Below are positions 1-29,085 of a DNA stretch of 64,000 nt, one piece after another; positions within the stretch are counted from its first letter, which is position 1; every line of letters begins with the position of its first letter. This DNA comes from Podarcis muralis. Taxonomy: Eukaryota. The translations under genes and the position numbers were made by a program. The notes beneath the pieces are model-generated. The model ran no database searches and was not told where the DNA came from. It was given only the letters and a program-made list of their open reading frames with translations. The stretch covers positions 82,894,001 to 82,958,000 of the forward strand of contig NC_135655.1 of NCBI RefSeq assembly GCF_964188315.1. The letters run 5' to 3'.

Positions 1-34
1 CAGCCCCTTTTCTGCTATTTCATTCTGGATGCAG

Positions 35-3000
35 ATGTGGAGAAGCGGCAGAACCCAGTGTGCAGTTTTGTGACCCCACTAGAGTGCAGTGATGTAGATG
101 TGCACCGCAAGCCCGAGGTGAGCAAAGGTTATTTGGGCCTTTCTTACTTAGTACAAAGAAGACAGACTATGCATTTCTGTATGTGACCCCTGGCTGCACC
201 TTTGTTTGGCAGGCTGTCATCATGGAAGGAAAGTACTGGAAACGCCAAGTTGGGGTGGTCATCAGGGAATATCACAAATGGAGGTTGTTTTCCTATACCC
301 AGGTAAGTGTCTTCTCCAGCAAGATGTGTTGTACTTCATATAGCTCCCCTTCACCCCTAGATGACATGTTCCACCCAAGCTCATACAGTCCTTTTTAGTG
401 TCAACCAAGGAAATCAGGTAGCCAATCCAGAAGCACCTTGGAACTCCATTGTAAGAAGGTGGATTTTCTAGATGCTTCTTGCCAGGCTACCATAGACTGC
501 ATCTGGTGGTTATGAGGTGATCTGGTACTAGACTGGCAAGGCTATGTTTCCATCTTACTCCGATGGGTGCCTTGGCCTATAGACTCATTTCCGCAGCTGC
601 CAAAGGCTCTCATTCTCTTGCCCTCTCTCATTTCCACAAAGACACACACTGGTCACCCAGCTATCCCTGTGTGATTATTGTGGTCTGCAATGGCTTGGCT
701 GAGGCCTCATGTGTTCATTGTTGTTGTAGCCGTAGTAGTAATAATAATAGTACATTATACCTAGCCCTTCCTCCCAAATGTGTCCAGGGCAGCAATAAGC
801 CAGATAGGATTTTATTTAGCTACCTATGGTTTTCCTCTAGCTAAGTATTGTAATTGTAGTACTTTCAGTGGCCTAATCCTAAACATTCTGTGCATTTTGT
901 TATAGGCTTCAAAGAAGATGGATAAACCCGTCTATGGTTCTGCTCAGGTGCTATTTTAATGCCTTGTTCCTATACTGCACCCTCCAGATTCCCCTTTCCC
1001 CATGGCAGAGGGTGGAATTAAAAAAGCTTGGGGGTTGTCTGCAGCCATTCAGCATTCCAGCCCCTCATTTGAGTTTGCCTAAAGTTGGAGTTCACAGCTC
1101 TTTCTCTTCCATTCTGGACAGGAAGTAGCTGATGATGTTCCAAGGGCAGAGCTGAAAACGGATGGAACAGATGCATGCCCCATGGACCTTGACCCCTTGC
1201 ATGACCTGGATGCACTTCTGGACACCTTCATTTCTAGCCGCAACCCTTATGGTGGCCCCAACCTCCGTGGCCTTGGTGAGAGGCCTTGCTTTGTGCTCAT
1301 TCCATCTATCTCTGGATCTGTCCCTTTCTACCAAGAAACCCTTTAAGTTTTCTCCACTGTCCCCAGAGGCTGGTACAGATGCCTCTAAAGGGTGGAGAGA
1401 GCTTTTGAAGTATCTCCATGTGAGAGCCAGTCCCTTGCTTGTGCACCAGAGAACAATTGCTATGGAACAAAGTAGTGAGCGAGTGATATTATTTCTCATT
1501 TTGTGTCTTCAGCTCACCAGGGAAATGCGGATATGATCCAGCCCACCCTGACCCAACTGCACCCCATCTTTGGGGAGGAGTTTATGGACTTGGACCCCAT
1601 TCAAGGTAACAGCAGAGGTTTTATGGCTGTACTTAGTGGTAAGGTGGTGCATCTCAAAGCTGAAAGACATCCTCTGAAGCACTTTATATGGCTTCTTAAG
1701 ACCACTTCAGACTGTGTTTAAATTATTTATCCATACTGTACACACTTAAAAGAAATGTGTTTGTTTATAGATGCTACTGGGTACATGCTGCTAGGATCTC
1801 CTGATCAGCAGCAATTCCCTTCAATGCTTATCTGTAAAAGAGCCCTTGGATTCCTCAGAATTGCAGCTTGCATATTTACTAAACTCACTGTTAGGGAGAA
1901 AACAGAACAAAATATGAAAAGCGTGTCATCAAGGCCCAAAAATCAAATAGAAACATGTATTATTATTATTTTAAGCCCACAAGTTAATCACCAGTTTTGA
2001 AAGATTAACTTGTGACCTCAAGAGTAAATAACATCTGAGTCTGGGTCACCAAAGTGGGCTGAAAGCTATCACTGGTGAGAGGAGACTATTTCCAACCTGA
2101 CATTGATGAAATTCTAGTTCACTCAAGGCCAGAGCAGAATGTTGCTGAGCAAACATGATACGTCCTGGTAAGACTAGACATTATTTAAATCAGTCAGCAT
2201 GCACATAAAAATCCTCTTTTGGGCATCCAATGCTCTAATAGAAGACTCATTCTCCATATAATCACATGCATACTGTGCTTTAGATATTGTTTGTCCCCTC
2301 TCCCATTTTCTGAATCAGCCAGGACAAATTCTTCAGAGCCACTGTATATCCCCTTTTCACAGGAAGAATAAAGTAGGCAAATTAATCTTGTATGAATTCT
2401 TAATTTGAAAAATCTTAAACTTACGAGTTTGTCATCTCAAAATTTCTACTTGCAAGTATAGCATCTACATATAGAGCCTATTTCAGTCTCATTCCTGCCA
2501 CTCCGTCACATAACTCTGAAATCAGCAGTCCCCACCTGCAGATTGCTCCTGTTCTTGACTTGAGTTTCTCTACCAGTTGACATATCCTGGATTTTAGGTC
2601 TCATCTTTCTTCGAAACCACTAACTGATGTCTGCTTGTATGGTGGATGTGAATGAATGAATGTTTATTATTATGACCAAACAGCCAGCATACTACCTGTA
2701 TGGTGAAATCCTGATGATTCCTTGCTTAATTGATTCAGACACACCAGCCAGTTATCTTCTACCAGTTGCTTTTTATCTCCTCCCAGCCTTTTAAATCTTT
2801 GCTTTCTTTTCACAGAATTCATCACTTCCTGTCGTTCTCAGCCCACGATCCAGGTAAGGATAATAAATTTATCTGATAGCTTACAAACTCCTTGGGCTTC
2901 TGCAGCCCCTGATGCTTATTGCAGATACTGGTCTGTGCTTGATTTTGATTTTGGAAAGGCAATAGCCTTTTCTCAGCATTGCAAAAAAACTGAGCAGTGG

Positions 3001-6000
3001 GAGTTCTCCCACTTGTATGATTTTCAGTGCAGACATCTCCAGCCTGGACTCAGGAGTTGTGTTTGATTTGCACTCTCTTCTCCCCCCTCTTAGGCTTCTG
3101 CAGTAACAGATGCTAGTGCTTTGAACCAGTGCAACCCAGATACACCTCTCATTGCCCCTGGGACCAAGGATCTCCCACCACCTGGAGACTCTCTCAATCC
3201 CATTCCCATCTCACTGGATGTGGAGCCGCCTGTACCTTTGAATGGACAGCAGACCTTCCTGCCATTCTTCCCCACCTCCCCACTGAGGATCAGCCCGCCG
3301 CCTGTCTCTCCCATCTTGCGCATGCAGCCTCAAACCACTTTGGTCTTCTCTGTCATCACGCACACAGGATCAGAAACAAATTCTCCGTCTGTATTTCGGG
3401 ACACTTTTGCTGTGCCAGTCTCTGCTCCTCCACCCAAGGATGGGAAATGCAGACACCTGCAACGGATTGCTCCAGCACCCTCCTCTAGCCAGCAGCCAGC
3501 CCTTCCCGGTGCTCCGCTCCCTTGCCTGCTTGCAACTGGTATGTCCCTGCAAGGACAGGCTCTCTGCAGGGGAAATTGAGGCATTGCTGACCTAGACTAC
3601 AATGCTTCTCTAGATCCATTTGGAGTATTAAGTCATACTGCAGAATTCTCCTTTCTTTTTGGTGGTTGTTTTCTCAAGCAAATCTCAACAGGACCAACTT
3701 TTGGAATCCCTAATTTAAACAACTGCATGCATTATTAGTGTTTATTTTGATATAATTATCTGAAGCTGGAGTTTAGCTTCATACTTGGGAATCACTGGAA
3801 GCAAAAGCATTTTTCCGTACTGGAAAAATAAAATATGTGGTCCAGGGAGATAGTTTTTTTGTGTTACTGCAGAATTTAAAAATGATATACATTGGTGCCT
3901 CGATTTTCGAATGTAATCCATTCCAGAAGACCGTTCGAGTTCTGAAACGTTCGAAAACCGAAAACTCAGTATGGAACTGAGTATGGAAAACTCAGTGCAG
4001 GAGCCGAGTGACATGTTCGACTTCTGAGGCGTGTTTGAAAACTGAAGCATTTATTTTTGGGTTTCCAGCGTTCAAAAACTGAAATGTTTGTCAATGGAGA
4101 CGTTCAAAAACCAAGGTACCACTGTATCTGACTTGAGCTGATAGGCATTACCTAACAGTGCCTGTATCTCCTTCAGTGGATTTAGGGTTTAGCCTTGCAG
4201 AAATTGTGTGTCAAAACTATGTACTGACTAGTCTGTAGAATAGCAAAATGGTTAGTCCACAGGTATTGGAGACGGATTTAAGGTGGCAATCTTACTTGCA
4301 ACTATAATACATATGTGTAAAGATGTCTGGGAGCTGCTGTTTGGAAAGGGAAAGAAAAAGTCCTCTATAGAGAGCCAGTGTGGTGTAGTGGTTAAGAGCA
4401 TTAGTCTCATAATCTGGGGAACCGGGTTCATGTCTCCGCTCCTCCACATGCAGCTGCTGGTTGACCTTGGGTCAGTCACACTTCTTTGAAGTCTCTCAGC
4501 CCCACACACCTCACAGAGTGTTTGTTGTGGGGGAGGAAGGGAAAGGAGAATGTTAGCCGCTTTGAGACTCCTGAAGGGGAGTGAAAGGCGGGATATCAAA
4601 TCCAAACTCTTCTTCTTCTATGCCCAAATTCCTGCATTGATCCCCTTCTTGCTTCTCTGGAGTGTAGTTAAGCTTTTTGTTTCGATGCAGCCAGCAGTTT
4701 GAGCCAGGTAAATCAAGCAAAACTACAAATGTCAACATTCGTCCAAATGCTTCATAGTTAAACAGAAAACCTTCAACTCATTAGTAGAAGTGAAATGACA
4801 GCTCATTAATATAACTCTGCATATTTACTAGCTTTTTAAAGTTATATTTTAATTTCTCTTAAATCTACAAGTGAGCACAGATTTTCTTGACCCAATTCAG
4901 AACAAGGCTCTTGTGCCTTGTAGCTTTTTTGAATGGGGAAAGTTGTCAAGAACTGTAGAGTCTTCTAATGTGCAAGCATTATGAAGAGAATCTGTAACTA
5001 TGAAACTTTCCTCTCTACCCCATTTAAAACTCACACATAAAGGTCCAGAATTCCTATCCTCGTGTGTCTGATGGCAAAGTGGGTACCAAACAGTTGGTGT
5101 CAGATTGGCTGGTGGTACATGCAGGAATTTTATGAGACGCTAATGGTTATGGGGAAACCAGGTCTAGGTATGTTTTGGAAGGGATCCCTGAGGCAAGAAT
5201 GCTCATTGGCCTCTCTGTTGGGTAGGGTGCCATGCATTTAAGTAGAGATCATTAGCCCGAATTGTATTTTCAGTTGTGGTGGGTGGGATTTCATAAAGCA
5301 GCAGACTCCTTTTCATTAAATAAATTCTGCCACATTCAAAAACTTGGTCTACTGGTGAGCAGCTAAACTGAAGCTGTGTAGTTACAAGGAGTGAGTGATG
5401 CTGCTTCAGCCAGCCAAGTTTTGTACATGCATTGGGGGTTAATACATAGAGGCTGGGAAAATAAGAACATCTCTTTCATCTCTAGGTCCTGCCCCACTGC
5501 CCCTCACTCCAGTCATGAACTCTGTGCAGGTAAGGATGCTCTCCTCTGCCACCTTCCTTCTGCGAGGCCTCCTATCTGTGTTCTGCTTTTTGCCTCCTTG
5601 GAGTTGACAGGCGGTGTATTTTTCTATCTTTCTGTTTGGCTGCTCTCTCTCTCTCTCAACCCTGCTTTTCCTCTCCCACAGGTGTGTGGCGTCCCAAAGC
5701 CCCCTGTGAATATGCTGAACTCATTCTCGGCAACGGTGAAGTCTCCTCCACTAGCATCTGCTGCTGCTTCCCCTGACACTGGTAAGCTGGCTCAGGAGGG
5801 TGCAAAGTCACTCGGCCTCTCTTCTTAGCAATATCTCATCTGCTTTCACTGGATTGGTCTATATGCCGTGCCAAAGTAGAAATTGAATACACACCTTAAG
5901 AAATTGAATACACACTCACCTACCCCAGTATTTTTGGGATTATTTCAGGTGCCAAAACCAAGGAGAGAGCTGAGGACAACACACACTGCAAACCCCAGGA

Positions 6001-7714
6001 AGTGGACAAATGCTGTACTGCCAAGGTAATAAGGATACCCACACCACTGTACCCCATCTTGTTGGCTTGAGTATTGTGGGAGAAGACATCTTTTCTCAAA
6101 GACGATAGCCAAAGGGGTAGTCGCCTGGCAGTGTCTCAAATCATGGCTTGATTGGCTCTTGCAGGGAAGTCGCAGATCAACACTTACCTCGGCTGACTAT
6201 GCCCGTCGTAGGGTCATCAGCTCCGGCTTCAACACTCTTGCCACTCTGGTGTTGACAGGACCTGATCAAAGCAGCACTAAGGTAAGCATCCCCCACTGTA
6301 CCAGAGGGTGGAAGGGCACATATTCTCTGCTGTTTGTCCAGTCCTCCCAATTTGCTTTGTGAACCATTCTTGTGGTCTTTGCCCTCCCAATCCATTTTAC
6401 ACCTTTACTCCACCCCCTCACCTCCCCAGTTCAGCAAAGCGATGCTCCTGCAGAAAAGTGCGGCACATGTGGAAAGACTGCAGCAAGAGCGCCGACAAGC
6501 TCAGGAGACAGTTGAAAGACTACGTGGGGAAATCAAAGAGCTGAGCACTGCCATTGAGTGAGTTGGGGGGCTGGCTTAAGGGGTTGAATTTTCATTGGAT
6601 CAGGGATACAAGTTAAAAGGTGAGAGGGGAACTCCTGTCAACAAGTTGCGGCTTTTCTCTTCCCTGCAGTGACTTTCAGCGCCAGCTTCCACCTACGGGA
6701 GCTCCTGTGCTGCCACCACAGTCAGATCAGGCTTCTCAACTCTATGAAGAGTATGTGCGCAAGCGCACCCTGCAGGACTGGCGCTTCTGGCTTGTATCCA
6801 CCACCAAGCATGTGGGATGGGATGGGACAGGTTAGAGTGCAAGAAAGCAAGCAAGGGGAGGTATTTGGCATGGCATCAGTGGCCTGCTGGGTGCTTAAGG
6901 GGAGCAGGGAGACTTGGCTGCATAGGCTCCTTAACCTCTTCCAACCTGCAGTTCAGCATGGTGATTAAGCCACTCTTTGAGAGCTACACCAGGACAGTGA
7001 GCACAGGCAACGTCAAGGAATTCTGCGACTCAGTGTTGAGCTGGTTGGAGCAGCACTGCACCCTGCCCATCTTGCGCCCTGGTATGGATCAACAGGGAAA
7101 TCTAGAAATGTCTTTCCCTTCACTGACCCATCTCTTTCCCCCCCATGGCTTTCAATGATCCTTGCCTACCTTCTGCTCTGAAATCTAGCACGTGCTTGTG
7201 TATCATTCACCCATCCTACTCCTGCTTGAAGTACTCTTACCTTCACACATAACTAAGAGAGTGGAACCATGGCTTACCAATTATACTCCACATTCCCGAT
7301 TCCCTTTTCATGCCTTGCTAAGTTACTAGACACAATTGCCCATCACTATGATCCTTTCCTTGCCCTGAAGCAAGATTATTGGGCACTGCCTTAAAGCAAG
7401 GCCCAGATGTGACCTTAGGAGTTACCTGGCTTTGTGGTGTTTAGGAAAAAATCTAGCTGGAGATGCCAGCTGTTCTCACAAGTCTTCTATTCCTGATACT
7501 TCCAGAAGACTTGAAAGGATTTTCTTTCTAGGAATTAGGAGAAAGTGTCTGCATTGAGTTCATTGTTACTGTTTTGGTTTTTTGTCCCACAGCTATCTCT
7601 GGCTCCCTCCTGCAGCTAAGCAAGATCACATCCATACTGACTCGGCCAACCCAGTTGCGTGAACAAGCCCTGCAAGCGGTAGCTGGCCCTCCACACTACA
7701 AGAGCAACAGCTAG
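35..7714 (+). CDS. Mondo-family (MLXIP/MondoA / MLXIPL/ChREBP-like) bHLH-ZIP transcription factor, 5'-partial, 15 coding exons in window
   Basis: Phase-consistent GT-AG exons: 35-117, 213-302, 906-947, 1122-1275, 1513-1605, 2816-2853, 3094-3538, 5486-5529, 5682-5781, 5949-6025, 6165-6281, 6430-6557, 6670-6793, 6952-7081, 7593-7714 (TAG). Peptides match Mondo motifs: PVCSFVTPL, EGKYWKRQVGVVIREYHKWR, GNADMIQP, SKAMLLQKS...LQQER, QLPPTG...RTLQDWRFWL, FSMVIKPLFES...WLEQHCTLPILRP. Small middle exons (906-947, 2816-2853) are less certain. Confidence 0.9.
3890..4124. mobile_element. Tc1/mariner (Tigger-like) MITE
   Basis: TIRs cattggtgcctcg...ccaaggtaccactg, flanked by TA on both sides. Confidence 0.75.
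4371..4620 (+). mobile_element. tRNA-derived squamate SINE with (TCT)n tail
   Basis: A-box tggtgtagtgg, B-box-like ggttcatgtc, body typical of squamate SINEs, tail tcttcttcttct. Confidence 0.7.
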
Positions 7715-10576
7715 GATGAAGACCAGGTCCAGTGCTATATGGACATCCTCACACACTACCAGGAAAGCCACCAACAGGGACCTCTATCTCAGGAATTCAT
7801 TTGCCATGCAACAAAGAAGCTTATGTTAGACAGTATTGGGGTTTAGATTGCCAGAGCAGAGAATCTCTGAGTATTCATTTTGGTGCTGGACACCTCTTAA
7901 TACTCTCTCTCTTTTTGCAGAACTTCAGGTAGTAGAGTGGGGGATGTGGGGAATAAGGCTAGAATGCAGATTTAATTGCCAGATGTAGGATGCCGGCCAT
8001 TGCTTTAGCCTCTTTCAGAACTGGGGTGAAAGATTAGCCGCATAATAATTAGTGTGGCCTCCATTTCCTGTGTTTTCCCACCAGAGGGCAGTGAAAGTGA
8101 TTCTTGCAGGCCTTCTCAATACATAGAGAAATACTTCCTCTGTATGATTCATGGCTTTGTTCCTCACTAAATTTGAGTGTTTGTGGCTAAGTGTTCGCCG
8201 CCCCCCCCCCCCAATATGGAGTATATGTTGGTGGCAGATTTTACCTATGCAACCATACCCATGAACCCTTTCAGGGGTGTAGAGGATCAATTTCTCCAAT
8301 CTTTCATTTTAGCTCGGAGACCTTTTGTAGGACTGTGTATTTTTTGTAGATCTGCTGAATTTTTACAGGGGGTGGAATCTGACTTCAGCTCAGTATTTGA
8401 TGGTACAATCCATTCTCCATCCCCTATGCTCATGTTTCTTTTCTCAAGTTACATATTAGCTTGGCGTGGAATCTGGAGTTTATTTATGCACAACACATCC
8501 TGTACTATGTTTGCCAAACTTTGTTCTAGGCTCCCAGCTAATGTACAACAACTCCTGACATCTGACCACACGGAGGTTGTGTGATGGGGAAGACACCACC
8601 TAACCACTGATAGGCAACCTGTTCTGTCTCCACTACTGTAACTGTATGATTGCATAACCTTCTGCACATGGCAATACCTCATTCAAAACTCCCAAGTTAG
8701 TAATAAAGCTAATGCCTACAGGAACAGGAGCCTAGCTGACTAAACTAGGGAAAAGGCTTTTTTACCATTTCCAGAGTTTTGAGTAATATCTGAAGTAGCT
8801 CTGGACATTTTGGCACCTGATAACAGAGAATCCAAATGTCAGACCTCTATCCCCCCACCCTCCCCCAGTTAACAGGTACAACCATTGAAACTAGCAGGAA
8901 CTGTGGGGGTGCATAGATCCTTTTCGTTCCTGATGGGTAAGCTCTACAGCTTTATCTTTCATTACCAGATGAAAGCCTTTGATGATTGGAAATTGTTCTA
9001 GCTGTTTGCATACAAGATATTCTAATACTTATGTGTCCAGAAATACACAAGAGAAAGAGTTGGAAGGGACCACGAGGATCATCTAGTCCAACCCCTTGCA
9101 ATGCAGGAATCTTTCACCCAACGTGGAGCTCGTTGTTGAGATCTGGCCTAGGTGTGTGTGGTTTTCTTTTCTTTTTACTGATTTATTATTTCTTCATTCT
9201 GCTACAGGCCCAAAATTTTCAGCAACAAAACCAAAAAAGCTATTCTATTATCATATAGGAATATAGTACTAGTACTAGTTTTCCATCAGCCACTTTAACC
9301 AAGGAATGGGCAACTGATTGATTCCCATGGGAGACTCACCTCAGTATACAAAATCTACTTCAAGCCCAGGTGTGCTTTCAGTCTGTGGGATGTTCTATGT
9401 CCCTTTTCTGTACCTCTTTTACTCATGAATGATGGTGGTGCTTTTTAAGAGTCTGCATTAGCTGAAGGTAACCACTCTGCATTTATGTGAAGCTAATGCA
9501 CAATACAGCTGACCCTTTCACTGTTCAGCATGGGAGGTTTACTGCAGAAAAGACTTCCAGTGCTTGCTCACCTAGATGTAATTACTGATAGCACTTTACT
9601 TCCTCCAGTCCTGGAGTTCTTTAGTTAACGTGTATTAAAAAAAGAATGAGAGCACACATGAATTATGAATTCTATCTTGAAAATATTCAGTGGACCATTT
9701 GAGATTTCTTGTGTTTCTATATCATTTTGTAATTTTAGCACTATTTCTGTATGTTCCACATATGTCACTAAAATACATTTGAGTAATCTTTAAGCGTTGT
9801 TTTCCTTTTTCACAATTCAGCAACTCCACTCTTTTCATACATGTAGGCAGCTGCCAGCCTTTGGCCAAACTGCAAAAGCACCTGCTGGGCTTTGCAGTTC
9901 CATCTTTCAAAAGCATCCCACAACCAACTTCTGCCCAGCCATCCCCACTGCTCAGCTGCTAAGGCCTAGGAATAGCCAAATAGCACTTCAGTTGGGGGGG
10001 CACACTATTCAGTTATTCATAGTGCTACTCAGCTGGGCAGCAGGCAGGGAGGTATGCAATAGATCTCTCTGTTGGTGATGGAGTTGAAGAGTCTGTACAT
10101 CTTCCTTGAGCAGGGTGGGGAGAATAATGTGTCACAAACTATTCAGATGTGGCCCCATTGACACATGTAGCTGTTAGATGTGCAAGTGTTTTATTTCTCA
10201 GTCAATTAACTTGAAAGCCAATTCAACAAACCAAGCAAGTTTGCAAAGAGCACACAACAGTAAAATAAACAGGATGCAGTGCTATACTAAGCTTGGCTTC
10301 CAAGAACTAGTCACTCAGTTTTGGGGATTCTTTTCCCCAGCACAGCATATTGATCCAAATCAATCCTCACCTTCATTTGACCTCAGCCTTCTAAGTACTC
10401 CCTAAGAAACTTTGATTAGGGCCAGAACCCATAAGTGGAGACCAGCTAGTAGACCTTGGCATCTTTTTAGGGCTGTTACATCCAAGCACAGAATCTCCAT
10501 GATAGGAATGAAGAAGTTATCCAATAATGTCAAAACTCAGGGACTTCTCAGGCTGAGATACCATCACATTTTCCTC

Positions 10577-13500
10577 TCAGAGGCAATATCCATGCCACAG
10601 GCTGCAAGGGAAGCATATGGAACATGGTTACTGTCTGGAAGAATCCTGACTTGGCATCTTACATGCCTCCTCCACCTACTGTGCCAAACAGCAGGCATGG
10701 GCAGCACAACAGCAGCAATGGTGCCTGTTTTACAGTCAGTATAAGCAAATGATCTGTGGGGAGGCCGCAGCTCTCAGCTTTCAATTCTAGGAAGTCATTG
10801 GCCAGAGAGAAGGTGGCGAGTAGGAAAAGGAATACATAGGAAGGAAGTGGGGGAAAGGATAAGTGGGAATACCTGCTACTGAATGTGTCCACATTTCTTA
10901 CATGTAAGCCTTTTTAACCCTTTAAAAATTTTGTTGGGCCCTGAGCTGCTTTCAGAGACTCTAGTGAGCATAAGAATGATGGACCAAAGTCATGTCTGGA
11001 TGTGAGACAAGGAAGCCCCATGTAAGCTACTCTGTGCTTCCTAAAGCAAGTAAACTGTAAATACATACTAAGGCTTCAGTGCTCAATGCTTCAAATGGAG
11101 TCATAGTAAATGCTGTGGGTTGGAAGTACAGCAAAGGTGAAGCAAAAATCTCATTCTTCAGCAAGGTTCTCACACAACATGCAAGCTGACTGCCAAATGT
11201 CAACTTCGTAAGCGCCTCTGCTTCTGACAATCTCAGCCACTAGGACTTCCTACCATGAAATGGCCAGGACGGTCTACCAAACACCCTGGCGGAAGCTGCA
11301 AATAAAGGAGAACTGCTTGTTCTTGGCTTCTGATCTCTTTCCTATTCTAATCCCCAATAGGTGAGTTATGGATTTTACTTGACCTTTGCTGAGCTCATAC
11401 TTCCATTTGCCCAGTTCATTTTGTGTATTACCTCTTGCGATACAGTTACTCCTCATTCATACAGTTGTGAATAAAAGATGCCCAGAGCTTAGCCAAATTA
11501 TCATGTGACCTGCTTAGCACTGCCATGGCCTTGCACCACCAAGCCCAACCTCAATAGTCTTCCTCTTCCAGATCTCATTACCCTAGAACAGATGCTTCCA
11601 TCCAGTGCCTGAGAAGGACAGAGCAGCTTTTCCATACTAACCTGTATGTAACGAGAGGGTCCTTGTTGTGCTTCTCTAGCAATTCCCGCACCATAGCAGG
11701 GGGGTTGAGACCCAGTAACTCTGCCCTCTCCCAGCGCTGCAAACGGGTGATTCCTGTCAGGGGGAAAAAGGTCTCTCAAAGTGGCCTCTTCAACACCAGT
11801 GATCTTCAACCACCTTCCTTGCAAGTCTATTGCCACTAGATGAATTTGAGAATTAACTAGGAGTCCCCTTTTCCTGGTATGCTGCCACTTACTATAATGT
11901 AACACTTTAACAGAGCATAGGGAGACTGGTCCCTGCCCCATGGAGGTATATCTAAAATTGTGCATGGAGGGAGGCAGGGAAAACCTATGCTTTCATTGCA
12001 GTGATGTGTACTTTGGCTCAGTTGTAGTAGCAGCATGATTGGAAGTTCTTACCTGTACAGGGGCCGTACTGCCAGCTGAGGTCAAATTGCTTTAGTGTCT
12101 CCAGCTGGTCTGGATGTGCAGCATCTTGGACTGCCTGCACTGTCACTGCGTCTGATCAGAGAGAAATGGATGATTATCACCGCATTATGGAGAGCTCTTG
12201 TATGAAATGAGTGTGAGGAAAGGGTTAACATAATTCTTTAGCCAACACCATTACATTAGTTATCTCTCGTTTGCTCTACAACCCGTATAACTCTGCCTGT
12301 GTTTTTTTAGCATCTCTTCACCCACACTTCGATCTCATGTAAATATGAACACACACAACATGTGCTGACTGAAGGAAACAACACTAACATAATTAATCCA
12401 TTGCTCATTGAGAATGCTCCTCTTCTGTAGAGGGTTCCCCACCTTTTGGGAGTACCGGTATATGTTTCATATAATTTTAAGGTAAAGGTAAAGGGACCCC
12501 TGACCATTAGGTCCAGTCGTGACCGACTCTGGGGTTGCAGCACTCATCTCGTTTTATTGGCTGAGGGAGCCAGCGTGTGGCCAGCATGACTAAGCCGCTT
12601 CTGGTGAACCAGAGCAGCGCACGGAAACGCCGTTTACCTTTCCGCTGGAGCAGTACCTATTTATCTACTTGCAGTTTGTCGTGCTTTTGAACTGCTAGGT
12701 TGGCAAGAGCAGAGACCGAGCAACGGGAGATCACCCCGTCGCGGGATTCAAACCGCCGAACTTCTGATCGGCAAGTCCTAGGCTCTGTGGTTTAACCCAC
12801 AGCGCCACCCGTGTGCTTTTTACTTCCTGCTAAATGATTTTTCAAATACTTCACTTTCACAGAAATCCTGTGCAATAATTCATCACCACTGTCCTATAGC
12901 AACTTGCTAGCTAAGCAAGTGGCAAGTCTATTACTGATTAACCCTTGCTTGCATAACCGTGGTATTGAGTTATGTGCAGCTCCAACAAACAACCTAGGAG
13001 ACGACCAAAGCAAGAACATGCAGGGAAAGAGTTTGCAAGAACTGATGTCTTGCAAATCTCAAGGGCCACTCCATCTACTCCCCACCTAAAGCTGCTGCAT
13101 TTTCACCCTTCCCCCCTGTTCAGATTATCTACCTATTGGTAGCAGAGGTATCACCTTGTCGTGGTGAGTGGGCTTGCACATGCCTATGACCCTTGTGAGT
13201 GAAGCTGTCAGGAGTCTCGTACTCCCAACAGGGTCACCCAAGGTGGCAGGGTCAAAGTGGAGGAGCTAGACAAAGAATGATCCAAGAAGTCCTCAACAAC
13301 AGAACAGGTGGAAGATAACAAGTGGCATGTTACATCGGCTGTGAAGGCGGATGAAGGCTGCAGCAGATAAGATAGAGCCTTACCGCGAAGACTGCTTTGG
13401 TCAGCGTGCACTGATCTACACACATGAAACAAATTCACGCACAAGCATCTTCCAAAAACCCATACCAAACACAAACCCATAAAACTCCCATGGCGATCGG

Positions 13501-14331
13501 CAAATGGTAATATTATCTCCCAAAAATTTGACACATCACTTGGGAAGACAGGTGAACTAATGCCGGTGTACTGGAAGAAGCAAAGATCACCAGTGCTGAA
13601 GCAATGATTCTTCAGCATCAACTACATTGGACTGGTCATGTGCGGACGCCTGATTATCGTCTTCCAAAGCAACTACTCCATTCCGGACTTAAAATGGAAA
13701 GTGTAATGCTGGTGATCAAAAAAAGAGGTTTAAAGACACCCTCAAGGCAATTTTTAAAAAACGTAGTATAAAAACTGACAATTGGGAAACACTGGCCTGT
13801 GAGCGCTCCAATTGGAGAACAGCCTTTAGCAAAGGTGTCATGGACTTTGAAGATGCTTGAATTCAGGATGAAAGGGAGAAACACAGTAAGAGGAAGACAC
13901 ATTTGGCAAACCCTCACTATGATCAACTCCCACCTAGAAACCTATGTTTCCATTGTGGAAGGATGTGTGGATCCAGAATTGGCCTCACAGTCACTTACGG
14001 ACTCACTGTTAAGATTGTGTTCATGGAAGACAATCTTACTCGGCTACGCCAAAGAAGAAAAAGGATTTACGGGAGCATGACCAAATCGGTTGCACTGGGC
14101 ACGGAGACTTGGGGGTGCCACAGGGAACGCTGAAAGTATGATTTAAAATGAAGCGAGAGAGGTGAGGGGCGCTGAATTTTGGTGTTGCACCAGGTGCTGC
14201 TGAAATTCACGCATCCCTTCCTAGCAATACTCACCATGGAGTGGGCTCTGAGCCTTCTTTGTTTCCTTACTGTCTCTTTTCCTCTTCTTCACCACTTGGA
14301 AGGAGTCTGTGATTAGCCGTTTCCTGCCCAT
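10577..14331 (-). CDS. POLD4: DNA polymerase delta subunit 4 (p12), 110 aa, 4 exons
   Basis: Minus-strand exons 14235-14331, 12053-12151, 11642-11753, 10577-10601 with canonical splice sites give MGRKRLITDSFQVVKKRKRDSKETKKAQSPLHDAVTVQAVQDAAHPDQLETLKQFDLSWQYGPCTGITRLQRWERAELLGLNPPAMVRELLEKHNKDPLVTYSLWHGYCL*. It has the N-terminal PIP-degron KRLITDSF and the QFDLxWQYGPCTGITRLQRW signature. Candidate AATAAA on minus strand at 10190-10195. Confidence 0.96.
12481..12812 (-). mobile_element. Sauria SINE in POLD4 intron 1
   Basis: ggtaaaggtaaaggg tail (reverse of (ACCTTT)n), characteristic body ccagagcagcgcacggaaacgccgtttacc, and reversed tRNA-like head. Confidence 0.85.
13140..14050 (+). mobile_element. 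Internally deleted, decayed RTE-clade LINE
   Basis: RTE-type 5' end (caccttgtcgtggtgagtgggcttg) joined to a decayed ORF 3' end (SAEAMILQHQLHWTGHV..PDYRLPKQLL; C-x2-C cgrmcgsrig). Boundaries approximate. Confidence 0.6.
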
Positions 14332-14849
14332 GGTTCCATGTGGCAAGGCTCACAGAGCATTAACAGGTTGCTCTAAACAAGGAGCTGAGGAGAAGCAGAG
14401 ACTGTTAGACAAGCTGCTGACTAGGACCTTCAATCTCCAAACCTACTGTCCTAATACCAGCTACCAGTCAAAACGACTTTATTTCTGGGAGAAAAAACTA
14501 CGCAAAAAGGTGTTTGGACTCTCCTAGCTGGTGGCCTTCTCCCATGTGGAAGTTCTTTGCCTCCAAACACATTAAAGAGCCTAAGTTTATGTAAAGGAGA
14601 AGGAAGTATATTCTGTGCATGGTCAGAGACCCTACACCTTTGCATTTTCCAGGACTGTGTGTCGATACTGAAAAATTCTCAGCCCGACTCCAAGGCAGGG
14701 CAAAGTCCTTTCCCTGAGCGGGAGGCTATTCCTCTGTCAAGAAGTGCGTCAGAATCCCTTGCGGTCCCCATCCTGGACTCTGCTTCCTCCTGAAGCCTTC
14801 AAAGCAATGCACGACTCGTTCCTCTCTTCATCCAGACCTCGAAAACAGA

Positions 14850-15960
14850 CTCCCCGGTTCCTGCTCTAACCACTGGTTACTCTCCCCCACACCCAAGAGA
14901 CCTGGGGATCAAAACGATCCCCTCCCTCTCACCCCCCTGAACAGATAGATCCCTCTTGTTCCTTCTATAGCAGCCGCCTTCCAGCCTTTCCGAGTCGCCC
15001 CCTGGAGTTCCCTCCCCTAATGCCCAAACGCGGAAGGGCAGGGAGGATCTCTCTCCTCCTGTCACCCCGGAAAAAAGGCTCCGCGACATCTCTAGAAGCA
15101 GCTGAGTCCTTACCAGCAGCTGCGCCGGGGGCTGTCGGTGCTCCCCCCAATGTCTCTTGGGGGCGATGCGAGGACTGCGGGGTGGGAGCTGCTGGCACAA
15201 ACCGGTCCCGATTCTCCCCCCACCCCCGGAGCCGTTCTGGGTCTCCCCGGAGCAGCCGCTTGTTGTTTTTGCACGGATCGGCCAATGGCAGCGCTGCTTT
15301 CGCTTTGCGTTCAAGGCGGCGGCAGCGGAGGCAGCGCCCCTGGCGGCCGACCCGGGGAAGGACGGCGGCTTAAGGCGTCGCAGGTGGCGCCTCTTGCTCT
15401 TCGGGGCCCCGCTATTCTCCCGGCTGTTTCCTGCGCTCCCCGCACTCCATCCCTCAGTCCCGCATCTATGCGCTCTCTTCCTTTTGCTCGAGAGATTTTG
15501 CCGCGATCAGAGGAGCAGAAGCCACAGAACCGCCAGAGGTAGCAACGAGACGCCTGCCGATTAATAGTAAGGCATGGGACATGTCCGGGCCAAAACTCTG
15601 ATCCGGAGACGGACCAAGAAAGGAGCGGGGCGTCCAAACGAGGAAACGCCGCCATAGCAACTTGCCTGCTGCGCTAGCTTAGCCGCTGTTTGGGCAAGGA
15701 GTGGGGAACCGGAGCAGAAAATAAATGCTTTACCTGGAGACTGTTTTTCCCAAAATCACTGAACTAGAGAGCAGCTTTGTCTTCTCCAGCAGCAGTGGTC
15801 CTCTTCCTTACAGCTCCCTCGATCCCTGCTCCTCCGCGATCTCCTTCAGCACCACCTGGTGGGAGAGGCTTGCAGCCGGCAGAAGCTTCCCCTGAAGCAA
15901 GCACTCATCTCTCGTTCTATGGAAGCAGACTCGCCTCTTTTTCATTCGGAGAATCGGCCG
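14850..15960. promoter_or_regulatory. CpG island / probable POLD4 promoter and 5' UTR
   Basis: Dense CpG and GC content 0.5-1.6 kb upstream of the POLD4 ATG on the minus strand; CCAAT near 15282; RFX-like half site ccatagcaac at 15652-15661. The ORFs called here are low-complexity artefacts. Confidence 0.8.
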
Positions 15961-19760: not shown

Positions 19761-22432
19761 ATGCAGATCCTGACCTGCCCCTCCAAGTTGAAGCTGCTTG
19801 AGACTGTGCTGCAACGGCACCTGCCCCAGGCTCTTCCGGTAATCCTCGCTCCTCTACTGCCGCCCCCTTTCCCCATCAATTTAACAATTCCTACCATTTT
19901 CTCATGGAGCAACATGGATTTTTGCTCTAGCTAACTCCCCTCCTTTCCTTGGCAGGCCAACGGAGCTGTGATGCACATCAACCGCAGAAATCCAGCTCAG
20001 CACGAAGTGGTGGTGGACTCTTGGCCAGAGTTTAAAGTTGTCCTTACCCGCCCACGTAAGGAGGTGAGAATTCTCCCATAACCCGTCACCTGAACCTGTG
20101 AGAAAAAGCCCAAGAGACGGTAGCTTCTGAGGCTGGAAAACCATTGGAGACGCACTCCATGGTGGTGCCGGGCCTGTTCCTGCCTCCTTTGCCTTTTCTT
20201 GCTCCTGCTCTTAATAAGACCCAACCAACCCCCGCTACCTGCGTCCTGTCAATAGCCAAATGACTGTGCCACGTTCTGCAGGTAGTGAAAGACAAGCAGG
20301 ATTGCTACTCCAACTTTCATACTGCTTTCTACCGGGATGTAGACGCCTGGCGAACACTCTTGGAAAATGCAGAAGCAATTGACTGGGGAAAGGCCTTCCA
20401 GCTTAAAGGTAAAGCTCCTCACCCTCTACTTATTCCATTCCTGGAATAGCAAAACTAGCTTCCTGGTAAGGTGATGAGACATTGAGAGGTACAAAGGAAG
20501 TGGCTCTGTGTGAGATGGAAAATGGGTGGGTAGTTTGAAGGGCAAAGGCTGAGTTAAGAGCAGAGGATTGGAGTGATGTGAGCTAGAAGCACATTAGCAA
20601 GCTGGGAAGAGAGAAAGAGAGCAATGTTTGATTTCTGTTTAAATAGAAGGCTGTGAGCATGGGAGAAGCGAGTCCCTCTTGGGGTGTTAATACTGCTCAG
20701 GTTGTGTATATGTGTAAATAAACCACATGCCACAGAGACACCACAGTCTCTGCTATACCTCATTCCAAAGGAAACACCAACCCTGGGTAATCGCCTGGAA
20801 TCCTGGAATTTCGCACTGCTCAAAGACTGGCTGGCACACAACACTATAATCATACAATACCAAGAGAGGTGCAGACACCGAGCATTAGAAAATATAATTC
20901 CTCACCCCCAGGTTGACATCTCATTTTCATTGTGTGCAGGGCTCCAAGATGGCTTATATGAAGCTGCCAGAGAGATTGCAGCGTCCAGACGTGTCAGTCT
21001 TAAGCCATACTTCTACCAGACAACCCTGCATCCTGACCCATCTGCCTACTGTCAGAGCCGGTTAGTGAGTGCATATTATTTGTGGACTGAAAATAACAAC
21101 AGCAAATATTCAGTATTCATTGGACTGTTTTCTGTTCTGGAAAAGGGCTGACTAGCTCAACACCAGCAATTTCTGCTTCTGTTTTCATCAGAATTCTCAG
21201 ATGTTCCTCCGCATAATCAGTAAGCAGTGAATTGTAACCCAACACCAAGTTCCACATCTGATTGCTATGTCCTGGCTTAGTTCTGCCCACAAAACAGGAG
21301 GAGAAAGTCACAGAGTCACTTCCTGAGCTTTTTCTCTTGCAACTTCCTGTTCATTTGTTCCAGTTGATGGTGATGAAATACTTTTTAAGCTTTCAGTCTG
21401 CTCAACCGCCATCACTGTCGTGCAGCGGTAAATTAATCATAGCAGAGTCTTCTTTATAAACAGAATAAAACTTTACTGAAGAAAATAAATTTGTTCAGAA
21501 ACAGCATAGTTAAAGAGCATACACAGAGTGCTCATAGCAGCTATCTGACTCTTCACAGAGGTCCTGGAGCCACTGTGTCTACCTCAGCTTTACATGGCAA
21601 CAACAACAGCACTGTTCACAGACTACTCCATACACAATCCATACAGCTCTCTGACTGAGGCTCCTAGAGAGGCTGGCTACTTTTACAGAGAGAATGAGTC
21701 TTCACCCAAGATGAGTCACGAGTCACAGTGACTTAGCAGTTTGCTGTTAGCAGGCTTAGGCTTGAATGATTGTGTAGGCCTTACCAGTGGTGTAGCGTGG
21801 GTTGTCAGCACCTGGGGCAAGGCAAGTAATTTGTGCCCCCTAACCTGTGGATTTGCGCCCCTAACCCATGGATTTGCCCTAACCCCAGATGTTGCGCCCG
21901 GTGCGGCCGGCCCCCCCTGCACCCCCCACGCTACGCCACTGGGCCTTACTGCTTCTTCTGCTCTCAAGAACCTTTGTCTCATGACAATCACTGCCTCTCT
22001 TTGTATTTCAGGTACAGAAGTGGCCTCTTCCACTTCGGCAGCCTAAACTCCTCCCATTCAGCTCTGCTCAATGAAAACTGGAGTGTTGGGCGCAATGATT
22101 GGAGCCTACGCTATCTGGACAGCCTGATCCACAACTTCCCTAGTGCTTGCCTCCTGGACAAAGAAGAACAGCTGGTTTCCTGGTGCCTTAGTGATCCAAT
22201 GGGTTGTTTGACGCATGGCTACACTCTCCCTCAGTACCGAGGTCAAGGCTGTGTGGCAGCTGTGACAAGGGCAACAGCTGTGAAGTTGCACGCATGTGGG
22301 TTCCCCCTGTATGGTGGGGTTTTGGCAGACAACCAGCCTAGCAAACAGGCATTGAAGCGGCAAGGATTCCACATCTTGCCCTTGACGAATTATGCGCTTT
22401 TCTTTACACCAAGCCTTCAGCCCACAAGATAA
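19761..22432 (+). CDS. GLYATL3-like: Glycine N-acyltransferase-like 3-type protein G1a, 284 aa, intact
   Basis: Exons 19761-19838, 19956-20063, 20282-20408, 20940-21060, 22012-22432 (78/108/127/121/421 nt, GLYAT-family phases). [14 protein letters not shown]..., [38 protein letters not shown]. Confidence 0.93.
21785..21941. mobile_element. hAT (Tip100-like) MITE in G1a intron 4, same family as 17936-18091
   Basis: TIR cagtgg(t/c)gtagcgtggg; 8-bp TSD ggccttac at 21777-21784 and 21942-21949. Confidence 0.9.
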
Positions 22433-29000: not shown

Positions 29001-29085
29001 TGTCCAAATGCAGAGGTTGCTGGAATATATGGGCTCCCAGAGATTATCTGAATTGTGTCATCTCTGCATACATTCTTCAGTTTAG
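26061..29085 (+). CDS. GLYATL3-like: Glycine N-acyltransferase-like 3-type protein G2a, 278 aa, intact
   Basis: Exons 26061-26138, 26746-26853, 27513-27639, 28212-28332, 28683-29085. [14 protein letters not shown]..., [30 protein letters not shown] probable 5' UTR intron at 25733-26000 is conserved in G2b and G3. Confidence 0.92.
26980..27322. mobile_element. hAT MITE in G2a intron 2
   Basis: 8-bp TSD ttaggagg at 26972-26979 and 27323-27330; degenerate CAG(G/A)G termini; absent from the G2b and G3 paralogous introns. Confidence 0.8.

What the first reader, a model, noticed from the sequence alone, without database searches (positions are those of the whole stretch)
6165..6281. bHLH basic region lacks the E-box-reading His and Glu: possible Id-like MLX antagonist
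Seen: RRSTLTSADYARRRVISSGFNTL aligns gap-free to ChREBP RRITHISAEQKRRFNIKLGFDTL, giving H->L, E->D, Q->Y, K->A. Helix 2, the zipper and the C-terminal DCD/WMC dimerisation domain stay well conserved and open. Known: the invariant basic-region Glu contacts the CA of CANNTG, and the H-E-R triad specifies CACGTG. Inference: the protein may still dimerise with MLX but fail to bind ChoREs (a natural dominant-negative or sink) or have novel specificity. This would be an undescribed regulatory layer in carbohydrate signalling.
Basis: partly seen in the sequence, partly recalled or inferred. Interest (0 to 1): 0.85.

Follow-up and report, generated by a model that had tools for sequence, protein, structure and literature searches.

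The report
Third Mondo paralogue, altered DNA-reading head
This lizard exon belongs to an expressed, selectively maintained third relative of the sugar-sensing factors MondoA and ChREBP (absent from mammals), in which the residues that normally read the E-box DNA motif were replaced about 350 million years ago, so it probably reads DNA differently or damps the pathway.

Summary
Window 6165-6281 (+) is a canonical GT-AG exon encoding GSRRSTLTSADYARRRVISSGFNTL... At bHLH position 5 it has Leu where ChREBP has His, and at position 9 it has Asp where ChREBP has Glu.

It is neither a private mutation nor an error:
- RNA contigs from three studies and stranded raw reads confirm every splice junction and both codons.
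- Of 44 tetrapod orthologue clusters, 43 carry Asp9 and one (emu) carries Asn. These span squamates, tuatara, turtles, crocodile, ostrich, emu, caecilians and salamanders.
- The lungfish orthologue keeps His5 and Glu9.
- All 263 MondoA and ChREBP clusters examined keep Glu9-Gln10-Lys11.

The gene is not ChREBP. It forms a third Mondo clade (100/99 support) lying between SSH3 and POLD4, and it coexists with MLXIP and MLXIPL in turtle, ostrich and caecilian. It has 17 intact coding exons, and dN/dS is 0.18-0.32.

Three points qualify it:
- A pure Id-like sink fits poorly with the invariant Asp9, Arg12 and Arg13.
- MLX pairing is untested.

The scan had already noted the third paralogue on this same window (s1-152586). 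I found no paper describing it.

The parts
33..117 (+). First exon of the gene inside the window (part of MCR III, ..YVEKRQNPVCSFVTPLE..). The two 5' coding exons lie upstream of the window.
   Evidence: tblastn with lacertid orthologues; acceptor gcag at 29-32
213..302 (+). Exon encoding MCR IV (EGKYWKRQ..REYHKWR)
   Evidence: GT-AG borders
906..947 (+). Small exon (ASKKMDKPVYGSAQ)
   Evidence: reproduces the orthologue sequence exactly
1122..1275 (+). Exon (EVADD..NPYGGPNLRGL)
1513..1605 (+). Exon encoding MCR V (GNADMIQPTLTQLHP..)
2816..2853 (+). Small exon (EFITSCRSQPTIQ)
   Evidence: junction 2853/3094 seen in RNA
3094..3538 (+). Large proline-rich central exon
   Evidence: RNA contigs and reads
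4365..4620 (.). Intronic tRNA-head SINE-like repeat. It is not part of the protein and explains the huge RNA depth in that bin.
   Evidence: no Rfam match
5486..5529 (+). Small exon, skipped in one RNA contig (alternative joint 3537>5681)
5682..5781 (+). Linker exon
5949..6025 (+). Linker exon directly before the bHLH exon
6165..6281 (+). bHLH exon of the finding: basic region, helix 1 and loop
6171..6209 (+). Basic region positions 1-13 (RRSTLTSADYARR): Leu5 at 6183-6185, Asp9 at 6195-6197, Arg12-Arg13 at 6204-6209
6430..6557 (+). Helix 2 and leucine zipper exon
6670..6793 (+). First DCD/WMC exon (..YEEYVRKRTLQDWRFWL)
6952..7081 (+). Second DCD/WMC exon (FSMVIKPLFESY..WLEQHCTLPILRP)
7593..7711 (+). 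Last coding exon; stop codon TAG at 7709-7711, with 3' UTR beyond
10570..14350 (-). Approximate position of the neighbouring POLD4 gene (context only), inferred by colinearity with Lacerta agilis

Best explanation
The exon is the bHLH exon of a lacertid lizard's copy of an unnamed third vertebrate Mondo paralogue, here called clade C. Automatic pipelines annotate it as 'MLX-interacting protein-like'.

Shown:
- The gene sits between SSH3 and POLD4 and has the ancestral 17 coding exons.
- It is transcribed and correctly spliced, and it evolves under purifying selection.
- It keeps the whole N-terminal sugar-sensing module (MCR I-V), an HLH-zipper and a DCD/WMC domain.
- Its DNA-reading head was remodelled on the tetrapod stem: Glu9 to Asp, His5 lost (Leu/Phe/Ser/Pro), Gln10 to His/Tyr/Cys, Lys11 to Ala/Thr/Val, Lys17 to Ser. 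Asp9, Arg12 and Arg13 have been frozen since then.

Inferred:
- The protein still dimerises through the HLH-zipper/DCD, most likely with MLX.
- It cannot read a CACGTG half-site in the canonical way.
- The dimer therefore binds ChoRE-type tandem E-boxes weakly or not at all, and probably prefers a shifted, asymmetric site.
- The protein thus acts as a sugar-responsive modulator that diverts MLX and output away from canonical ChREBP/MondoA targets. It would not be an inert Id-type sink.
For: - Sequence and splice sites.
- RNA: every junction from 2853/3094 to 7081/7593 is seen as GT..AG in contigs from three studies and in stranded raw reads. The only change in the exon is synonymous.
- Orthologues: 43 of 44 tetrapod clade-C clusters have Asp9, 0 of 44 have Lys11, 1 of 44 has His5 and 44 of 44 have Arg12-Arg13. 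The lungfish member keeps His5 and Glu9.
- MondoA (n=139) and ChREBP (n=124) keep Glu9-Gln10-Lys11-Arg12-Arg13 in 100% of clusters. Amphioxus and the invertebrate representatives whose basic region was extracted mostly read HxSAEQKRR too.
- Third clade: careful ML tree gives A 100/100, B 100/100, C 100/99. Clades A, B and C occur on different contigs in Carettochelys, Struthio and Microcaecilia.
- Synteny: SSH3 - gene - POLD4 in five squamates and in emu; POLD4 lies downstream in Caretta. The window is colinear with Lacerta downstream of the gene.
- 17 exons in five squamates and emu.
- Selection: dN/dS is 0.18-0.32 overall, 0.05-0.23 for the HLH-zipper, 0.08-0.27 for the DCD and 0-0.34 for the 14 basic-region codons. 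Codon 9 is GAC in six squamates while neighbouring codons show synonymous turnover.
- Pfam HLH covers only profile positions 12-53.
- Literature: the conserved Glu makes the only base-specific contacts in SCL:E47 (PMC3714592). Pho4 E259D still binds and is hurt less on CACGTT than on CACGTG (bioRxiv 10.1101/2020.06.22.165571).
Against: - No binding, dimerisation or reporter data exist for any member of the clade.
- The HLH (37-46% identity) and DCD (47-54%) are more diverged from MondoA/ChREBP than those two are from each other (64% and 74%), so MLX pairing is not assured.
- Positions 1-8 of the basic region vary freely. Identity between turtle and ostrich or caecilian is 45-54%, against 92-100% in clades A and B. 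That also fits a head that no longer touches DNA.
- The clade evolves faster than A and B everywhere, and it was lost in mammals and apparently in frogs and neognath birds, so its function is dispensable.
- The basic-region dN/dS rests on only 14 codons.
Confidence: 0.5

Rival explanations
1. Pure Id-like sink. The protein dimerises with MLX (or with MondoA/ChREBP through the DCD), and the dimer cannot bind DNA at all. It would titrate MLX and dampen ChoRE-driven transcription, possibly in a glucose-dependent way through its intact N-terminal module.
For: - Five positions are replaced together: 5, 9, 10, 11 and 17. Positions 9-11 are invariant in all MondoA and ChREBP clusters; position 17 is invariant in ChREBP.
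- The N-terminal half of the basic region drifts freely.
- The Pfam HLH model does not recognise the basic part.
- Changing the equivalent Glu in TWIST2 has dominant-negative components (PMC7716464, which cites earlier work).
Against: - Asp9, Arg12 and Arg13 are invariant in 43-44 of 44 clusters over about 350 My, and Ser7 is kept in 39 of 44. Asp and Glu codons differ by one base, so this is active constraint on a supposedly useless segment.
- The basic region keeps five Arg and, in lacertids, no helix-breaking Pro, unlike Id proteins.
- Pho4 E259D still binds DNA (bioRxiv 10.1101/2020.06.22.165571).
Confidence: 0.25
2. Functionally ordinary Mondo factor. Asp9 substitutes adequately for Glu9 within the heterotetramer with MLX, and the protein activates ChoRE targets much as ChREBP does.
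For: - Asp keeps the carboxylate.
- Arg13, which reads the central CG in class B bHLH proteins (textbook knowledge), and Arg12 are kept.
- The whole activator architecture is kept.
Against: - Fixation is reciprocal: 0 of 263 MondoA/ChREBP clusters have Asp9 and 0 of 44 tetrapod clade-C clusters have Glu9, although the codons are one step apart. This argues that the two residues are not interchangeable.
- His5, Lys11 and Lys17 are lost as well.
Confidence: 0.12
3. The protein has changed partner. It no longer uses MLX and instead homodimerises or pairs with another bHLHZ protein, so it is outside the MLX network.
For: The HLH, zipper and DCD are the regions most diverged from MondoA/ChREBP. They also evolve faster than in clades A and B between the same species pairs.
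Against: The hydrophobic core positions Ile16, Phe20 and Leu23 and the DCD motifs (WRFWLFS..IKPLFESY, WLEQHC.LP) are conserved in the clade and shared with MondoA/ChREBP. No alternative partner is suggested by any data.
Confidence: 0.1
4. Artefact or decaying pseudogene: an assembly error or a private mutation in a dying gene copy.
For: The clade was lost in several lineages. The emu copy has Asn9, and the paleognath copies sit on a long branch.
Against: - RNA from several individuals confirms the codons and the splicing.
- All 15 exons in the window are intact, and orthologues have 17 exons.
- dN/dS is about 0.2-0.3.
- The same residues occur in 40-odd species.
Confidence: 0.02

Closest known systems
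MondoA (MLXIP)
   Same: N-terminal MCR I-V module at 61-74% identity, bHLH-zipper, DCD/WMC and a 17-coding-exon gene. By overall score it is the nearest named family to the basal (lungfish) member of the clade.
   Different: - Separate clade and separate locus: between SSH3 and POLD4 rather than the MLXIP locus.
- Long, ChREBP-type loop instead of MondoA's short loop.
- Basic region LTSADYARR instead of the invariant HISAEQKRR.
- Evolves several times faster.
ChREBP / MondoB (MLXIPL)
   Same: Gap-free bHLH alignment with the same loop length and the same domain order.
   Different: It is not the orthologue. Bona fide ChREBP exists in the same species (Rhineura, Carettochelys, Struthio, Microcaecilia) and forms its own 100/100 clade. 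ChREBP's basic region is identical in 124 of 124 clusters at positions 5-13.
Id / Emc class HLH inhibitors
   Same: A dimerisation-competent HLH combined with a head that lacks the E-box-reading Glu. A possible dominant-negative effect on a shared partner.
   Different: Id proteins are small and lack a basic region altogether (general knowledge). This protein is about 755 aa with a sugar-sensing module. It keeps five Arg, including the invariant Arg12-Arg13, and an invariant Asp9.
Pho4 E259D (engineered Glu-to-Asp at the same bHLH position)
   Same: The identical substitution at the base-contacting Glu of a CACGTG-binding bHLH.
   Different: It is a single engineered change in a yeast homodimer. 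It still binds and is hurt less on CACGTT than on CACGTG (bioRxiv 10.1101/2020.06.22.165571). Here four further contact positions are changed and the partner is different.
Class I bHLH-PAS proteins (HIF-alpha, SIM, AHR)
   Same: From memory, not tested here: natural bHLH proteins without Glu9 that bind asymmetric sites as heterodimers with a Glu9-bearing partner (ARNT). They are a precedent for the 'novel half-site' reading.
   Different: An unrelated bHLH subfamily with PAS domains and no leucine zipper or DCD.

Membership tests
Mondo family (MLXIP/MLXIPL-type bHLHZ sugar sensors) | N-terminal Mondo conserved regions MCR I-V | tested here: met
   MCR III (part), IV and V are encoded in window exons 33-1605. 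MCR I-II are present in full-length orthologues. Identity to MondoA/ChREBP is 58-74%, about the same as MondoA versus ChREBP.
Mondo family (MLXIP/MLXIPL-type bHLHZ sugar sensors) | HLH-leucine zipper followed by a DCD/WMC domain | tested here: met
   Pfam HLH scores 24.4 bits (cut-off 20.7) on the Lacerta orthologue. The DCD exon hits Mondo proteins at 56-65% identity, and the alignment is colinear to the C terminus.
Mondo family (MLXIP/MLXIPL-type bHLHZ sugar sensors) | Basic region HxSAEQKRR (His5-Glu9-Arg13 E-box reader) | tested here: not met
   The window has LTSADYARR. Of tetrapod orthologues, 43 of 44 have Asp9 and 1 of 44 has His5. Only Arg12 and Arg13 are kept.
Mondo family (MLXIP/MLXIPL-type bHLHZ sugar sensors) | Gene structure of 17 coding exons (ancestral state according to PMC4766361) | tested here: met
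   Exact CDS reconstruction gives 17 exons in five squamates and emu. Fifteen of them lie in the window.
Mondo family (MLXIP/MLXIPL-type bHLHZ sugar sensors) | Phylogenetic placement inside vertebrate Mondo proteins | tested here: met
   It falls within the vertebrate group (100/98) as its own clade C (100/99). Clade C is sister to lamprey+A+B at 93/86, which is not decisive.
Mondo family (MLXIP/MLXIPL-type bHLHZ sugar sensors) | Obligate heterodimer with MLX | not testable with these tools
   Only single chains can be modelled here, and no interaction data were found.
ChREBP (MLXIPL) orthologue | Groups with ChREBP and is the only such gene in the species | tested here: not met
   It forms a separate clade. 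ChREBP proper lies on other contigs in Rhineura, Carettochelys, Struthio and Microcaecilia. The neighbours are SSH3 and POLD4.
Id-type (group D) HLH inhibitors | No basic region (few basic residues, often a proline) and a small HLH-only protein | tested here: not met
   Five Arg in the 16 residues before helix 1, Arg12-Arg13 invariant, no Pro in lacertids, and a protein of about 755 aa with extra domains.
Id-type (group D) HLH inhibitors | Forms non-DNA-binding dimers that sequester a partner | not testable with these tools
   Requires EMSA and co-immunoprecipitation.
Class B E-box (CACGTG) binding bHLH | His5-Glu9-Arg13 triad | tested here: not met
   Leu5-Asp9-Arg13. Alignment to the Mad and USF2 chains of solved structures confirms the register.

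The most novel reading that the evidence does not exclude
Non-mammalian tetrapods carry a third sugar-sensing Mondo protein that keeps the glucose-sensing module but has a disabled or re-aimed DNA-reading head. It would work as a natural, nutrient-responsive competitor of ChREBP and MondoA for MLX, which would be a built-in brake or re-router of carbohydrate-driven transcription. It was lost independently in mammals, neognath birds and frogs.
Probability: 0.3. Interest if true: 0.8.

Novelty: new variant of a known kind. Interest (0 to 1): 0.62.

Why it matters
Papers on the Mondo/MLX network state that vertebrates have two Mondo paralogues (PMC3177325, PMC4766361; PMC11900861 says so for mammals). 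A third paralogue, about 400 My old, with an intact sensor module but a remodelled DNA-reading head would add a node to that network in reptiles, paleognath birds, caecilians and salamanders.

It also offers a natural experiment on the invariant bHLH glutamate. Asp and Glu are reciprocally fixed in sister clades, which makes the specificity question directly testable by swapping one residue.

It bears as well on how ectothermic tetrapods tune carbohydrate-driven lipogenesis, and on why mammals could lose the gene.

Tried and rejected
- Pfam and PDB searches with the 39-aa exon alone gave only a sub-threshold HLH hit (13.3 bits) and a spurious WD40 match. The full C-terminal region of the orthologue was needed.
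- My first tblastn-based codon maps were incomplete and non-monotonic. I replaced them with an exact spliced mapper. That mapper failed for Caretta, so no turtle is included in the dN/dS.
- DNA could not be fetched for Dermochelys isoform X7 (not on record) or for Microcaecilia (gene range over 100 kb).
- The first automatic splice model mis-joined exons 213-302 and 1122-1275. I corrected it after finding the 42-nt exon at 906-947.
- A regex for a POLD4 motif in the window found nothing. POLD4 is placed only by colinearity with Lacerta.
- Rfam found nothing in the high-depth repeat.
- Paper searches for 'MondoC', 'third Mondo', 'MLXIPL2' and for MLXIP with ohnolog or sauropsid found no description of this paralogue. 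That is absence from this library only.
- The pseudogene, assembly-error and 'it is just lizard ChREBP' readings were considered and rejected.
Full report
**1. The observation**

Window 6165-6281 on the + strand translates to GSRRSTLTSADYARRRVISSGFNTLATLVLTGPDQSSTK. The stretch follows an acceptor (ttgcag) and is followed by a donor (gtaagc).

I number the basic region so that the Arg-Arg pair before helix 1 is positions 12-13. The window then reads R1 R2 S3 T4 L5 T6 S7 A8 D9 Y10 A11 R12 R13. This puts Leu5 at 6183-6185 and Asp9 at 6195-6197.

MAFFT alignments to ChREBP from bird, frog, coelacanth, shark and teleost are gap-free through the basic region, helix 1 and the loop.

The Pfam HLH model shows the same thing quantitatively. 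The Lacerta orthologue scores 24.4 bits and matches only profile positions 12-53. The lungfish orthologue (40.1 bits), a turtle MondoA (41.2) and a bird ChREBP (47.1) all match positions 1-53.

**2. The gene around it**

Fifteen exons with GT-AG borders and no stop or frameshift run from 33 to 7711. They encode part of MCR III, MCR IV and V, a proline-rich linker, the bHLH, the zipper and the DCD/WMC, and they end at TAG 7709-7711. The two 5' coding exons lie upstream of the window.

The product is 98% identical to the Podarcis raffonei protein P0162, so the window comes from a lacertid lizard.

Exact reconstruction of the CDS from genomic loci gives 17 coding exons in Lacerta, Tiliqua, Heteronotia, Python, Phrynocephalus and emu. 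Singh and Irwin infer 17 for the ancestral Mondo gene (PMC4766361).

**3. Expression and sequence accuracy**

I laid contigs of three RNA studies and stranded raw reads on 2750-7950. Every predicted junction appears as GT..AG: 2853/3094, 3538/5486, 5529/5682, 5781/5949, 6025/6165, 6281/6430, 6557/6670, 6793/6952 and 7081/7593.

Single contigs span the bHLH, zipper and DCD exons. Raw reads lie almost only with the first mate on the minus strand, as expected for a + strand RNA in a stranded library.

The only difference inside the bHLH exon is 6206 T>C, a synonymous CGT>CGC change in Arg12. The Leu and Asp codons are therefore real, and the gene is transcribed and spliced. One contig skips exon 5486-5529.

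**4. Not a private change, and not ChREBP**

A search of 1.8 billion cluster representatives with the DCD exon found a small set of closer relatives at 72-88% identity. The ordinary Mondo proteins sit at about 60%.

Searching with one of those relatives (Phrynocephalus, P0003) returned a compact group. Automatic pipelines annotate it as 'MLX-interacting protein-like'. It includes squamates, tuatara, turtles, a crocodile, ostrich, emu, three caecilians and two salamanders, all at E <= 1e-153. True MLXIP begins at about 1e-137.

A transcriptome protein, P0224, is the basal member of the group. Its nearest relative is a Protopterus annectens 'MLX-interacting protein-like' protein, so P0224 comes from a lungfish.

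A search with coelacanth ChREBP returned bona fide ChREBP from species that also have the new gene. These are Rhineura, Carettochelys, Emydura, Chelonia, Dermochelys, Pelusios, Pelodiscus, Struthio, Rhinatrema and Microcaecilia, and in each the gene lies on a different contig.

A careful maximum-likelihood tree of 38 proteins gives MondoA 100/100, ChREBP 100/100 and the new clade C 100/99. Inside clade C the species tree is reproduced. Carettochelys, Struthio and Microcaecilia each appear once in all three clades. Clade C is placed outside lamprey+A+B with 93/86 support, which I do not regard as settled.

The neighbours are constant:
- A slingshot phosphatase (SSH) lies upstream and POLD4 lies downstream on the opposite strand in Lacerta, Tiliqua, Heteronotia, Python and Phrynocephalus.
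- POLD4 lies downstream in Caretta.
- In emu the order is ANKRD13 - SSH - gene - POLD4 - GLYAT-like - CLCF1-like.

From memory, that is the gene order of human 11q13.2, which has no Mondo gene. The window is colinear with Lacerta downstream of the gene and carries four GLYAT-like terminal exons.

This agrees with the earlier scan note s1-152586 on the same window. The evolutionary papers I could read state that vertebrates have only two Mondo paralogues (PMC3177325; PMC4766361). A 2025 paper says the same for mammals (PMC11900861).

**5. The basic region across the family**

| Position | Clade C, tetrapods (44 clusters) | MondoA (139 clusters) | ChREBP (124 clusters) |
|---|---|---|---|
| 5 | Phe 29, Leu 7, Ser 4, Pro 3, His 1 | His in 95; His one place later in 32 neognath clusters | His in all |
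| 9 | Asp 43, Asn 1 (emu) | Glu in all | Glu in all |
| 10 | His/Tyr/Cys/Arg; Gln only 2 | Gln in all | Gln in all |
| 11 | Ala/Thr/Val; never Lys | Lys in all | Lys in all |
| 12, 13 | Arg in all 44 | Arg in all | Arg in all |
| 14 | Met in 39 | Phe in 122 | Phe in 123 |
| 17 | Ser in 40 | Lys in 114 | Lys in all |

The clade C counts come and the MondoA and ChREBP counts. Amphioxus and the invertebrate representatives whose basic region was extracted mostly read HxSAEQKRR too.

The lungfish clade-C protein reads HVSAEHVRR. It has already changed positions 10 and 11 but keeps His5 and Glu9. The order of events is therefore positions 10 and 11 first, then His5 and Glu9 on the tetrapod stem. 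That stem is also the longest internal branch of the clade (0.43).

The fixation is reciprocal. There is no Asp9 in 263 A/B clusters and no Glu9 in 44 tetrapod C clusters, although the codons differ by one base.

**6. Selection**

| Region | Pairwise Nei-Gojobori dN/dS among six squamates |
|---|---|
| Whole protein | 0.18-0.32 |
| MCR part | 0.07-0.28 |
| Linker | 0.31-0.64 |
| HLH-zipper | 0.05-0.23 |
| DCD | 0.08-0.27 |
| 14 basic-region codons | 0-0.34 (few sites, noisy) |

Codon 9 is GAC in all six species, while Ser7, Arg12 and Arg13 show synonymous turnover.

The clade nevertheless evolves faster than its paralogues. Between the same species pairs (turtle-ostrich, turtle-caecilian), basic-region identity is 100% and 92-100% in A and B but 45-54% in C. 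The HLH is 78-97% against 58-75%, and the DCD is 83-95% against 63-70%.

Against MondoA/ChREBP, the sensor module of clade C is as similar (61-74%) as those two are to each other. The HLH (37-46%) and DCD (47-54%) are clearly more diverged than A versus B (64% and 74%).

**7. Mechanism**

Established knowledge:
- In bHLH-DNA complexes the conserved Glu makes the base-specific contacts to the CA of the E-box and is held by a neighbouring Arg (PMC3714592).
- In Pho4 the base-contacting residues are R252, H255, E259 and R263. They correspond to positions 2, 5, 9 and 13 here (bioRxiv 10.1101/2020.06.22.165571).
- The same study measured E259D. It still binds, and it is among the mutants hurt significantly less on CACGTT than on CACGTG. 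So Glu-to-Asp shifts preference rather than abolishing binding.

In clade C, two of the four base readers are gone (positions 5 and 9). Lys11 and Lys17 are gone as well; I take them to be backbone contacts by analogy, which is my inference.

I therefore infer that canonical CACGTG/ChoRE reading is lost or much weakened. I marginally prefer 'altered or attenuated DNA contact' over 'no DNA contact' for two reasons. Asp9, Arg12, Arg13 and largely Ser7 have been frozen for about 350 My. A head with no role should drift, as positions 1-6 do.

The protein keeps the complete sugar-sensing module, so whatever it does is probably nutrient-regulated. Pairing with MLX is plausible because the HLH core residues and the DCD motifs are kept, but it has not been shown.

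**8. Rivals**

- A pure MLX sink (0.25).
- An ordinary ChoRE activator (0.12).
- A changed partner (0.10).
- An artefact or pseudogene (0.02, refuted for squamates).

None of these can be separated further without binding and interaction experiments.

**9. Novelty and verdict**

The gene models exist in public annotation under uninformative names. I found no paper that recognises a third Mondo paralogue or its non-canonical basic region, which shows absence from this library only.

I class it as a new variant of a known kind: a Mondo-family bHLHZ whose reading head departs from a motif invariant in both named paralogues. The finding is real, extends far beyond the window's species, and is directly testable. 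Its functional reading remains inference. Interest 0.62.

Noticed in passing
Proteins P0225, P0228-P0231, P0233, P0234, P0236, P0239, P0241 and others (neognath bird MLXIP; not in the window): In 32 MondoA clusters, all those listed from neognath birds, the basic region reads H-x-S-E-Q-K-R-R. It is one residue shorter than the otherwise invariant H-x-S-A-E-Q-K-R-R, so His sits three rather than four residues before Glu. Waterfowl additionally have Arg in place of that His. Ostrich and rhea MondoA keep the normal spacing. Neognaths are also the birds in which no clade-C gene was found.
   Followed up: partly
window 4365-4620: An intronic SINE-like repeat with a tRNA-like head (gccagtgtggtgtagtggttaagagc...). 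RNA runs show word depths of 10,000-130,000 here and many loose ends, which means transcripts from many genomic copies. There is no Rfam match.
   Followed up: partly
window 21830-22429, 28519-29082, 47825-48388, 53883-54428 (+): Four copies of the terminal exon of a glycine N-acyltransferase-like gene (Pfam Gly_acyl_tr_N and Gly_acyl_tr_C). They sit in two pairs of large near-identical duplicated blocks. Emu has a single GLYAT-like gene at the same place next to POLD4.
   Followed up: partly
window about 10570-14350 (-), with a CpG-rich stretch near 14900-15600: POLD4 lies here by colinearity with Lacerta agilis locus L003. I did not build its exons.
   Followed up: partly
window 5486-5529: This 44-nt exon is skipped in one RNA contig (joint 3537>5681). 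Skipping it would shift the reading frame, so this is probably a minor non-productive isoform.
   Followed up: no
L009 (emu), protein P0219; P0208 (ostrich): The paleognath copies of the clade-C gene sit on a long branch. The emu copy has Asn instead of Asp at position 9 (AAC versus GAC) and an oddly extended gene model around the bHLH exon. This suggests relaxed constraint in birds before loss in neognaths.
   Followed up: partly
Hit lists: No clade-C protein turned up from mammals, frogs, neognath birds, coelacanth, ray-finned fishes or sharks, although their MLXIP and ChREBP were found. The only non-tetrapod members are lungfish. Absence rests on annotated proteins and 120-row lists only.
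   Followed up: no
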